Below, piece after piece: positions 28,518 to 28,995 of a stretch of DNA of 54,199 bases; position 1 is the first letter of the stretch, and each line of letters opens with the position of its first letter. Origin of the DNA: Octopus bimaculoides. Its lineage: Eukaryota. The stretch is from NCBI RefSeq assembly GCF_001194135.2, contig NC_069002.1, forward strand, positions 10,621,172 to 10,675,370. Reading direction: 5' to 3'. The notes under the pieces are model-generated. The model searched no databases. It was not told where the DNA came from and saw nothing but the letters and a program-made list of their open reading frames with translations. The position numbers and the translations under genes were made by a program.

Positions 28518-28995
28518 TCAATAGCCAGCTGGAGGAGATGTTCTCCTGGGACTAAAAGCTACAGTAGCATTCACCCTTAGGGGTTAGCCGCATTTAAGTG
28601 GCAAATATACTTCACGTTGTCGTGCAGCTGTTGTTTATACCTCGTTCAGAGATTTAACATTGCTCATTTAACTTTTTCGAGATCAGTGAATTTTCGTCAC
28701 TGGAAAAAGGATATATGTATTTGCATCGGGACCCCTTCGCATCGAAGATCGGTGATTGTCATGCGCTGACGAAGGGTAAATACCCAGAAACCCGGGTCCG
28801 TGCATATCACGTCAGGTCGACGATGGGAAAGATGACTTCCCTTTGCAAATACCGACAGGGCACAGAAAGTGTGTCAATAGCCAGCTGGAGGAGATGTTCT
28901 GCTAGGGCTACAAGCTACAGTAGCATTCACCCTTAGGGTTTAGCCGCATTTTAGTGGCAAATATACTTCACATTGTCGTGCAGAGATTTAACATT
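28518..28995 (+). repeat. Direct repeats (28518-28661 and 28874-28995) defining a 356-nt unit; retrozyme- or pseudo-LTR-like
   Basis: 110-nt blocks at 28518-28627 and 28874-28983 differ at 7 positions. The second copy lacks 22 nt between CAG microhomologies. Confidence 0.85.
28761..28805 (+). ncRNA. Type I hammerhead-ribozyme-like motif within a 356-nt direct-repeat unit
   Basis: ATGCG-CTGACGA-A-GGGT(AAAT)ACCC-A-GAA-ACCCGGGT-C-CG(TG)CAT. Core CUGANGA/GAAA, palindromic helix III and GUC triplet; predicted cut after 28798. Confidence 0.65.

What the first reader, a model, noticed from the sequence alone, without database searches (positions are those of the whole stretch)
28518..28995. Retrozyme-like 356-nt unit: direct repeats enclosing a hammerhead with a GUC site and palindromic helix III
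Seen: a 110-nt block recurs exactly 356 nt later (7 mismatches), so the locus is about 1.3 tandem units. Between the copies is ATGCG-CTGACGA-A-GGGT(AAAT)ACCC-A-GAA-ACCCGGGT-C/CG(TG)CAT. Helix I extends through an internal loop (GTGAT 28752-56 with ATCAC 28806-10). A 9-bp helix GTATTTGCA/TGCAAATAC (28717-25 and 28844-52) brackets the domain, and extra hairpins occur (CAGTGA/TCACTG, GGGAA/TTCCC). Established: metazoan non-LTR retrozymes are 150-400-nt non-coding tandem repeats with a type I hammerhead; they are cut to monomers and circularised, and minimal hammerheads with palindromic helix III work as dimers. Inference: this is a cephalopod retrozyme/circRNA family or a Penelope pseudo-LTR relic. 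Caveat: helix II is closed by an A-A pair instead of the usual G10.1-C11.1.
Basis: partly seen in the sequence, partly recalled or inferred. Interest (0 to 1): 0.85.

Follow-up and report, generated by a model that had tools for sequence, protein, structure and literature searches.

The report
Truncated hammerhead-bearing retroelement copy
This is a 478-base, 1.3-unit dead copy of a short non-coding mobile element carrying one hammerhead-type self-cleaving RNA motif, a known kind of element (Penelope-like/"retrozyme") in invertebrates, so it is a plausible but ordinary find whose ribozyme activity is untested.

Summary
Between the copies lies a complete hammerhead core: CUGACGA, GAA, A15.1-U16.1, C17, and an 8-nt palindromic helix III. 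It is the only hit of a relaxed hammerhead descriptor in the window, where about 0.005 hits are expected by chance.

The motif caps a 146-nt imperfect hairpin (z = -3.6). A third, 5'-truncated copy at 49510-49682 spans the unit junction and ends at the same unit position as the first locus.

Best reading: a 5'-truncated, more-than-unit-length insertion of a short non-autonomous hammerhead element of the Penelope-like/non-LTR-retrozyme type, with a fixed 3' end.

Limits:
- The locus holds only one hammerhead, so it cannot release a monomer by itself.
- Rfam reports no hammerhead, even at E<=10.
- An extra A sits between C11.1 and G12.
- The hammerhead fold is far from the predicted minimum free energy.
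- No other genomic copies could be reached, so core conservation, tandem arrays, expression and the cephalopod origin are all untested.

Verdict: new member of a known kind, of modest interest.

The parts
28518..28873 (+). First repeat period (356 nt). The element is 5'-truncated at 28518. The period holds the only hammerhead.
   Evidence: Direct repeat with spacing 356. The flank upstream of 28518 does not match the sequence upstream of 28874, whereas the third copy does match the latter. GC is 45.8% against 36% for the window. The unit's minimum free energy is -109 kcal/mol, z = -2.9 as a linear RNA and -3.4 as a circle.
28874..28995 (+). Partial second unit (122 nt). It has 7 mismatches to the first copy in the first 110 nt and lacks 22 nt present in copy 1. 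It ends at the family's 3' terminus, ...AGATTTAACATT.
   Evidence: The homology stops at 28995, while copy 1 continues internally with GCTCATTTAAC.
28761..28805 (+). Type-I hammerhead motif:
- helix I 5' strand, 28761-65
- C3-A9 (CUGACGA), 28766-72
- extra A, 28773
- helix II GGGU/ACCC with loop AAAU, 28774-85
- extra A, 28786
- G12-A14, 28787-89
- palindromic helix III ACCCGGGU, 28790-97
- C17, 28798
- predicted cleavage between 28798 and 28799
- helix I 3' strand, 28799-28805, with a UG bulge
   Evidence: Read directly from the sequence. It is the only descriptor hit in the window. Chance expectation is 0.005 per window. Rfam reports no hammerhead.
28717..28852 (+). Long imperfect hairpin that extends helix I and carries the hammerhead at its apex. 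It is closed by the 9-bp helix GTATTTGCA/TGCAAATAC.
   Evidence: (146 nt folded, 28712-28857): minimum free energy -52.1 kcal/mol, z = -3.62, 0 of 200 shuffles fold as well. The same long-range pairing appears in the fold of the whole unit.
49510..49682 (+). Third, diverged, 5'-truncated copy of the family. It covers unit positions about 323-356 followed by 1-141. It lacks the hammerhead and ends at the same 3' terminus. (TA)n lies upstream and (CT)n(TA)n downstream.
   Evidence: nhmmer E = 2.3e-10, alignment A1, sequence.

Best explanation
The locus is a dead, 5'-truncated, more-than-unit-length (1.34-unit) insertion of a short (356-nt period) non-coding retroelement. The element carries a type-I hammerhead ribozyme and belongs to the class described as Penelope-like-element pseudo-LTR derivatives or animal non-LTR 'retrozymes'.

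Proposed mechanism (inferred, not shown here):
1. Source arrays elsewhere in the genome are transcribed as multimers.
2. The hammerhead has a helix III that is only an 8-nt palindrome. It pairs with a second copy to form a double hammerhead and cuts after C17.
3. Multimeric or circularised RNA is then copied by a Penelope-type reverse transcriptase. That enzyme starts at a fixed internal site (here ...AGATTTAACATT, 197 nt 3' of the cleavage site) on a nicked AT-rich target.
4. It runs back through the hammerhead and the unit junction, and stops early.

This would produce insertions with a common 3' end and variable 5' ends, as seen at 28518-28995 and 49510-49682. This particular copy has one hammerhead and could at most be cut once.
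For: Shown here:
- The repeat and all listed helices are real.
- The complete hammerhead core is the only hit of a relaxed descriptor on both strands. About 0.005 hits per window are expected, and 0 of 400 simulations were as good. The hit falls inside a 478-nt repeat locus that is about 1% of the window.
- Helix I continues into a hairpin spanning 28717-28852, folded within a 146-nt stretch (z = -3.6, 0 of 200 shuffles). The whole unit is more stable than shuffles (z = -2.9 to -3.4) and richer in GC than its surroundings.
- An independent copy at 49510-49682 (E = 2.3e-10) spans the unit junction and stops at the same unit position as locus 1. This is the signature of retroposition from a fixed 3' start with 5' truncation.
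- Across the three copies, 8 of 32 predicted pairs in the shared 144 nt keep pairing through changes on both sides. Column shuffles give 3.4 +/- 1.5, and slid controls give 0-2.
- There is no ORF between the repeats, and no RT-like ORF was seen in the window.

From the literature:
- Penelope-element hammerheads have an extra nucleotide after A9, a G10.1-C11.1 pair and a palindromic helix III, and they act as dimers (PMC4209133, PMC6765202).
- Penelope elements insert as 5'-truncated partial tandems, often into (TA)n (PMC8557442).
- A Penelope RT starts at an internal RNA site about 90 nt 3' of the hammerhead cut, on AT-rich DNA (PMC11167929).
- Mussel retrozyme units are 350-390 bp (PMC7229834).
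- Animal retrozymes are argued to be non-autonomous Penelope derivatives (10.64898/2026.07.22.740005).
Against: - No Rfam hammerhead model reports the site, even at E<=10 on an 86-nt stretch.
- The extra A28786 between C11.1 and G12 is not a described natural variant in the papers I read.
- The monomer hammerhead fold is -4.5 kcal/mol against a minimum free energy of -21.2. The double-hammerhead fold is -29.7 against a dimer minimum of -46.7. The competing fold pairs C3 and G5-N7.
- Only three copies, all from one window, support the family. The one other locus lacks the hammerhead, so conservation of the core is unknown.
- The shared 3' end rests on two loci.
- There is no convincing target-site duplication.
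- No Penelope RT/GIY-YIG ORF is in the window.
- The covariation test used a structure derived from the same three sequences, which inflates it.
Confidence: 0.68

Rival explanations
1. This is an active retrozyme source locus. The repeat is transcribed, cut to 356-nt monomers by its hammerhead and circularised into a circRNA.
For: The unit size, the non-coding nature, the type-I hammerhead with palindromic helix III and the highly paired RNA all match the published description of non-LTR retrozymes (PMC7229834).
Against: The locus contains one hammerhead only. The second unit stops at unit position 144, while the hammerhead lies at positions 244-288. Two cleavage sites would be needed to release a monomer, and a partner hammerhead would be needed to form the dimer. 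There is no array of two or more full units. The two overlapping parts have already diverged by 6% and a 22-nt deletion. Expression cannot be tested here.
Confidence: 0.07
2. This is a fragment of the pseudo-LTR of an autonomous, protein-coding Penelope-like element. The 356-nt 'unit' would be part of a longer pLTR/UTR, and this locus would be a solo partial-tandem relic.
For: The evidence is the same as for the best explanation: a hammerhead of Penelope type, a partial tandem, 5' truncation, a fixed 3' end and AT-rich or (TA)n surroundings (PMC4209133, PMC8557442, PMC11167929). If the window is from an octopus, which is unverified, a mobilising partner is plausible: Penelope families are reported as abundant and recently active in Octopus vulgaris (PMC13282606).
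Against: In this locus the sequence returns to the start of the repeat after only 356 nt, with no ORF in between. No RT or GIY-YIG-like reading frame was seen in the window. The third copy also shows the junction as continuous sequence, which fits a short tandem or circular template.
Confidence: 0.15
3. The hammerhead-like string is a chance match inside an unrelated interspersed or tandemly duplicated repeat with no ribozyme history.
For: Rfam hammerhead models give nothing. There is a non-consensus extra A before G12. The hammerhead fold is energetically disfavoured. The first stage may have screened many windows, so a 0.005-per-window event will occur somewhere. The only other copy lacks this region.
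Against: Several independent features coincide:
- All 13 core positions are present, with H17 = C.
- The Penelope-type extra nucleotide after A9 is present.
- G10.1-C11.1 is present.
- Helix III is a perfect 8-nt palindrome.
- Helix I continues into a hairpin spanning 28717-28852 with z = -3.6.
- The motif lies inside a partial tandem with a retroposon-like fixed 3' end.

0 of 400 simulated windows gave a motif as good as this one.
Confidence: 0.1

Closest known systems
Minimal type-I hammerheads in the pseudo-LTRs of Penelope-like elements (Cervera & de la Pena 2014, PMC4209133; Frangieh et al. 2024, PMC11167929)
   Same: Shared features: type-I topology; an extra nucleotide between A9 and G10.1; a G10.1-C11.1 pair; a palindromic helix III, implying action as a dimer; a location in a partial tandem; insertions that are 5'-truncated and share a defined 3' end some distance 3' of the cleavage site; AT-rich or (TA)n surroundings.
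   Different: Helix II is 4 bp, whereas many Penelope families have 6-8 bp. There is an additional A between C11.1 and G12. The palindrome is 8 nt, not 0-4 nt. No RT/GIY-YIG ORF is nearby. The 3' end lies 197 nt from the cut site, against about 90 nt in the Anolis element.
Animal non-LTR retrozymes (Cervera & de la Pena 2020, PMC7229834), e.g. the 350-390-bp repeats of the mussel Mytilus galloprovincialis
   Same: Shared features: a non-coding unit of a few hundred nt (356); a type-I hammerhead with 4-bp helix II and a short palindromic helix III; a highly self-paired RNA in which helix I extends into a long stem; GC below 50%.
   Different: Here there are only 1.34 units with a single hammerhead, not an array of two or more full units. 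No circRNA or expression evidence is available. Loop 1-loop 2 tertiary contacts were not assessed.
Newt/salamander satellite 2 and axolotl HHR_Amex1 hammerheads
   Same: Helix III is a single A-U pair plus a palindromic loop, so efficient cleavage needs two copies (PMC7229834). The unit size is about 330-350 bp.
   Different: Those occur in large tandem arrays and keep the conserved loop-loop contacts. There is no sequence relationship to this element.

Membership tests
Hammerhead ribozyme (type I) | Conserved core: C3 U4 G5 A6 N7 G8 A9, G12 A13 A14, A15.1-U16.1, and H17 (not G) | tested here: met
   CUGACGA at 28766-72, GAA at 28787-89, A28790-U28797, C28798.
Hammerhead ribozyme (type I) | Three helices around the core, with helix I open (type I) | tested here: met
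   Helix I is 2 bp, a UG bulge and 3 bp, then continues (28752-65 with 28799-28810). Helix II is 4 bp with a 4-nt loop. Helix III is 1-2 bp in cis, or 8 bp in trans through the palindrome.
Hammerhead ribozyme (type I) | G10.1-C11.1 directly adjoining A9 and G12 | tested here: inconclusive
   G28774-C28785 is present but is separated from the core by A28773 and A28786. The 5' extra nucleotide is normal for Penelope hammerheads (PMC4209133). The 3' one is not described in the papers read.
Hammerhead ribozyme (type I) | Match to a curated covariance model (the Rfam hammerhead families) | tested here: not met
   No hammerhead hit at gathering score on the window, at E<=10 on 901 nt, or at E<=10 on 86 nt.
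Hammerhead ribozyme (type I) | Self-cleavage after position 17 | not testable with these tools
   This needs in vitro transcription of monomer and dimer constructs. Nearest-neighbour energies disfavour the active fold, but they do not model the core.
Hammerhead ribozyme (type I) | Conservation and covariation of the motif among homologous copies | not testable with these tools
   The only other copy (49510-49682) lacks the region. No further copies could be retrieved.
Animal non-LTR retrozyme | Tandem repeats (dimers to multimers) of about 150-450 bp, each with a type-I hammerhead | tested here: not met
   The unit length is in range (356 bp), but this locus has 1.34 units and one hammerhead. 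Whether arrays exist elsewhere is untested.
Animal non-LTR retrozyme | Non-coding, GC below about 45-50%, highly self-paired RNA | tested here: met
   The only ORF across the motif is 73 aa and has no homologue. GC is 45.8%. 58% of bases are paired, with z = -2.9 to -3.4. The hairpin has z = -3.6.
Animal non-LTR retrozyme | Expressed as linear and circular monomer RNAs | not testable with these tools
   No transcriptome data are available.
Penelope-like element (pseudo-LTR or non-autonomous derivative) | Partial head-to-tail tandem with 5' truncation and a defined 3' end | tested here: met
   Locus 1 is 1.34 units. Locus 2 is about 0.5 unit and crosses the unit junction. Both stop at unit position about 141-144. 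This rests on two loci only.
Penelope-like element (pseudo-LTR or non-autonomous derivative) | Association with an RT plus GIY-YIG endonuclease ORF | tested here: not met
   No such ORF lies between or next to the repeats, and none was seen in the 54-kb window (by inspection of six-frame translations). A non-autonomous derivative would not need one in cis.
Penelope-like element (pseudo-LTR or non-autonomous derivative) | Insertion into AT-rich DNA or (TA)n microsatellites | tested here: inconclusive
   The copy at 49510 is bracketed by (TA)n, and locus 1 is followed by ATGGAAATATTTTTTT. However, the window is 64% A+T and full of (TA)n, so this has little discriminating power.

The most novel reading that the evidence does not exclude
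The family could be an abundant, still-active retrozyme of this genome (possibly a cephalopod). Its hammerhead would naturally carry an A-A pair stacked between the sheared G-A pairs of the core and G10.1-C11.1. It would cleave as a dimer and give rise to 356-nt circular RNAs. That would make it both a new natural core variant and the first retrozyme described in that lineage.
Probability: 0.12. Interest if true: 0.5.

Novelty: new member of a known kind. Interest (0 to 1): 0.3.

Why it matters
If the family is confirmed genome-wide, it would add one more lineage to the list of animals carrying hammerhead-bearing Penelope-type non-autonomous elements. The retrozyme papers I could read do not mention that lineage.

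It would also give a natural example of how much irregularity the junction between helix II and the core tolerates.

Two insertions in one window end at the same internal position, 197 nt 3' of the cleavage site. This fits the recently described internal initiation of reverse transcription by a Penelope RT, and it could be used to map that site for a non-autonomous family.

As it stands, the locus itself is a decayed single copy with no expected function.

Tried and rejected
- **Rfam.** I ran it at three scales. No hammerhead or other ribozyme family was reported. The weak hits (sul1, snoRNAs, Plastid-rpl20) are chance.
- **Other copies through proteins.** The 73-aa ORF across the motif had no candidates. 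The 1355-aa neighbouring ORF gave 8000 word candidates, none significant, probably swamped by low-complexity words. Its non-repetitive N-terminal 216 aa also gave none. An exact look-up of the long ORF found nothing on record.
- **Public collection scans.** The hammerhead pattern on metagenome contigs, the 110-nt block on genome contigs, and the window's abundant SINE on metagenome, genome and viral contigs all returned zero. No DNA from this or a related genome is reachable.
- **Full-text search for the SINE sequence.** It found nothing, so the taxon stays unverified.
- **Pfam on six-frame translations.** I inspected the translations by eye instead.
- **tRNA and Pol III origin.** ARAGORN found no tRNA in the window, and I saw no clear A box or B box in the unit.
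- **Bacterial promoter/terminator scan.** It is not relevant to a eukaryotic locus.
- **Target-site duplication.** Only a weak G(T/G)AAATA similarity lies near both junctions of locus 1. I judged it uninformative in AT-rich DNA.
- **Minus strand.** The descriptor finds nothing there, and the minus-strand circle folds less stably (-95.9 against -107.2 kcal/mol).

Full report
**1. Observation**

The region reads as the first stage described it. A 110-nt block at 28518-28627 recurs at 28874-28983 with 7 mismatches and a spacing of 356 nt (blastn E 1.5e-43). If a 22-nt deletion in the second copy is allowed, the homology continues to 28995. The deleted segment is copy 1 positions 28628-49, bracketed by the near-repeats TCGTGCAG and TCGTTCAG. 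The locus is therefore 478 nt, or 1.34 periods. The hammerhead string and all four accessory helices are at the stated coordinates.

**2. Is the hammerhead more than chance?**

I wrote a type-I descriptor with these requirements:
- CTGANGA
- helix II of at least 3 bp, with an optional mismatch at its base
- GAAA
- a closing A-U pair and any short helix III
- H17
- helix I of at least 4 bp

On both strands of the window there are 33 CTGANGA cores, and only this site passes. In 400 first-order Markov simulations of the window, the relaxed descriptor gave 0.005 hits per window. No simulated hit was as good as the real one, which has 4-bp helices and a fully palindromic helix III. The hit also falls inside a repeat locus that covers about 1% of the window. 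Since the first stage may have read many windows, one chance hit somewhere is conceivable. The coincidences listed below make that unlikely.

**3. Anatomy of the motif**

| Element | Sequence or position |
|---|---|
| Helix I, 5' strand | AUGCG, 28761-65 |
| C3-A9 | CUGACGA, 28766-72 |
| Extra nucleotide | A28773 |
| Helix II | GGGU/ACCC with loop AAAU, 28774-85 |
| Extra nucleotide | A28786 |
| G12-A14 | GAA, 28787-89 |
| Helix III | ACCCGGGU, 28790-97 |
| C17 | 28798 |
| Helix I, 3' strand | CG(UG)CAU, 28799-28805 |

Cervera and de la Pena (PMC4209133) list four recurrent features of Penelope-element hammerheads that were not built into their search. These are an extra nucleotide between A9 and G10.1, a conserved G10.1-C11.1 pair, palindromic 15.2-16.2/loop 3, and compensatory variation among copies within each genome.

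Read this way, A28773 is the usual extra nucleotide and G28774-C28785 is a normal G10.1-C11.1 pair. The 3' A (28786) is the unusual one. It may be a mutation of this decayed copy or a family trait. I cannot tell which.

The 8-nt palindrome gives only 1-2 bp in cis but 8 bp in trans. This is the classic arrangement of hammerheads that work as dimers (PMC4209133, PMC6765202, PMC7229834).

**4. Evidence against an efficient ribozyme**

- Rfam reports no hammerhead at gathering score on the whole window, at E<=10 on 901 nt, or at E<=10 on 86 nt.
- The predicted stable fold of the 63-71-nt motif is not the hammerhead. AUGCGC pairs with GUGCAU, which captures C3. GAC pairs with GUC. GGGU pairs with the second ACCC.
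- The hammerhead fold scores -4.5 kcal/mol against -21.2 for the minimum free energy. The double hammerhead scores -29.7 against a dimer minimum of -46.7.
- Nearest-neighbour energies ignore the core's non-canonical pairs. Penelope hammerheads are known to be poor or protein-assisted cleavers in vitro (PMC4209133, PMC11167929). So this evidence weakens the ribozyme reading but does not exclude it.

**5. The surrounding RNA**

Helix I does not stop at 5 bp. The 146-nt stretch 28712-28857 folds into one long imperfect hairpin closed by the 9-bp helix GUAUUUGCA/UGCAAAUAC, with the hammerhead at its apex. Its minimum free energy is -52.1 kcal/mol, z = -3.62, and 0 of 200 shuffles fold as well.

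The full 356-nt unit, permuted at the predicted cleavage site, folds to -109 kcal/mol as a linear RNA and -107 as a circle. The z-scores are -2.9 and -3.4, with 1 of 300 shuffles as stable and 58% of bases paired. Its GC content is 45.8%, against 36% for the window. In that fold the two ends created by cleavage sit in one helix. This is the geometry described for retrozyme and viroid-like RNAs (PMC7229834).

**6. A second locus defines the family and its ends**

nhmmer finds a diverged copy at 49510-49682 (E = 2.3e-10). It matches unit positions 323-356 followed directly by 1-141 (alignment). Three conclusions follow:
- The sequence across the 'junction' at 28873/28874 is continuous in the family. 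So 28518 is a truncation point, not the start of the element.
- Both loci stop at the same unit position: ...AGATTTAACATT at 28995 and ...AGATTTAAAACT at 49682. Inside copy 1 the sequence continues with GCTCATTTAAC.
- The 5' ends differ. One copy is 1.34 units, the other about 0.5 unit and lacks the hammerhead.

A fixed 3' end with variable 5' truncation and a more-than-unit length is the pattern of target-primed reverse transcription from a multimeric or circular template.

This matches what is described for Penelope-like elements:
- 5'-truncated partial tandems that form pseudo-LTRs (PMC8557442)
- a bias for (TA)n (PMC8557442)
- an RT that initiates at a defined internal RNA site, about 85-92 nt 3' of the hammerhead cut in the Anolis element, after nicking AT-rich DNA (PMC11167929)

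Here the common end lies 197 nt 3' of the predicted cut. The copy at 49510 is bracketed by (TA)n, but (TA)n is so common in this window that this adds little. I found no convincing target-site duplication.

**7. RNA-level constraint in the shared part**

For the 144 nt present in all three copies, RNAalifold predicts six helices. 8 of 32 pairs keep pairing through changes on both sides. One example is the GGAGGA/UUCUCC hairpin, which becomes GGAAAA/UUUUCC. Column shuffles give 3.4 +/- 1.5 such pairs (4 of 500 reach 8), and slid registers give 0-2. With three sequences and a structure derived from them, this is suggestive only.

**8. What the locus is not**

- There is no ORF between the repeats, and the 73-aa ORF over the motif has no homologue.
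- I saw no RT or GIY-YIG-like frame in the window. The coding-like sequences are a 1370-aa low-complexity ORF at 19065-23177, a 224-aa ORF at 38623-39297 and Tc1/mariner remnants.
- The locus holds a single hammerhead. The second unit ends at unit position 144, while the motif is at positions 244-288. So a transcript of this locus cannot be cut twice to release a monomer, and it has no partner in cis to form the dimer.
- The overlapping parts differ by 6.4% and one deletion, so the insertion is not recent.

I therefore read it as a dead insertion, not a retrozyme source array.

**9. Comparison with known families**

The closest matches are Penelope-element hammerheads and animal non-LTR retrozymes. 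According to a 2026 preprint, these are phylogenetically one thing, with retrozymes being non-autonomous Penelope derivatives (10.64898/2026.07.22.740005).

The 4-bp helix II and the short palindromic helix III look like the 'canonical' metazoan type-I motif of retrozymes. Mussel retrozyme units are 350-390 bp (PMC7229834). The extra nucleotide after A9 and the insertion pattern look like Penelope.

Membership as a hammerhead is met on the core and the helices. It is not met on the Rfam models, and it is untested for cleavage and conservation. Membership as a retrozyme array is not met at this locus.

**10. Taxon and reach of the tools**

Three protein searches, one exact look-up, five collection scans and a text search for the window's abundant SINE all returned nothing. 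The octopus repeat literature reports Penelope families as abundant and recently active but does not mention ribozymes (PMC13282606, PMC8967140). The retrozyme papers I read do not mention cephalopods.

**11. Verdict**

The locus is most likely (about 0.7) a truncated copy of a hammerhead-bearing Penelope-type non-autonomous retroelement. That makes it a new member of a known kind, with an untested and somewhat irregular ribozyme. Interest is modest (0.3).

Noticed in passing
window 49317-49450 and at least 16 other places (e.g. 7620-7753, 12407-12540, 29793-29924, 36888-37021, 45895-46028): A SINE-like repeat of about 134 nt occurs about 17 times in 54 kb, on both strands, at 71-91% identity. 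Its consensus is CTGTGTGGTAAGTAGCTTGCTTACCAACCACATGGTTCCGGGTTCAGTCCC..., with a B-box-like GGTTCCGGGTTCAGTCC. Copies are usually followed by (TA)n. ARAGORN calls no tRNA in the window.
   Followed up: partly
window 19065-23177 (+): A 1370-aa open frame that looks like one very large exon. It is Ser/Thr/Lys/Pro-rich with RKATPT-type 18-nt repeats (20383-20793) and six nearly perfect 69-nt (23-aa) acidic repeats (22031-22447). Two protein-database searches found no homologue. The hammerhead locus lies 5.3 kb downstream on the same strand.
   Followed up: partly
window 25300-25647 (-) and 9610-10206 (-): Remnants of Tc1/mariner-type transposase reading frames, for example ...IVFHHNNARRHTS...LPNLASSDF... 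They are broken by frame changes.
   Followed up: no
window 38122-38379, 11265-11523, 34756-34935, 50823-50979 (-), 8981-9051 and shorter pieces: Another interspersed repeat family, with copies 77-96% identical over up to 259 nt. One copy contains an internal 67-nt tandem duplication (11288-11416). Its class was not determined.
   Followed up: no
window 38623-39297 (+): A 224-aa ORF of normal amino-acid complexity with a Ser-rich middle. It may be an exon or a single-exon gene. It was not searched.
   Followed up: no
window 4512-4710, 5630-6589, 7807-8340, 14961-15483, 47198-47760, 49033-49316 and six shorter runs: There are 3482 N in twelve assembly gaps, most of them next to (TA)n/(CA)n microsatellites. 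One gap ends 1 nt before the SINE that precedes the third copy of the hammerhead family. Any family sequence farther upstream of that SINE is therefore unknown.
   Followed up: no
window 28626-28649 vs 28982-28983: The 22-nt segment missing from the second repeat copy is bracketed by the near-identical octamers TCGTGCAG and TCGTTCAG. This suggests slippage or template switching. The third copy retains the segment.
   Followed up: partly
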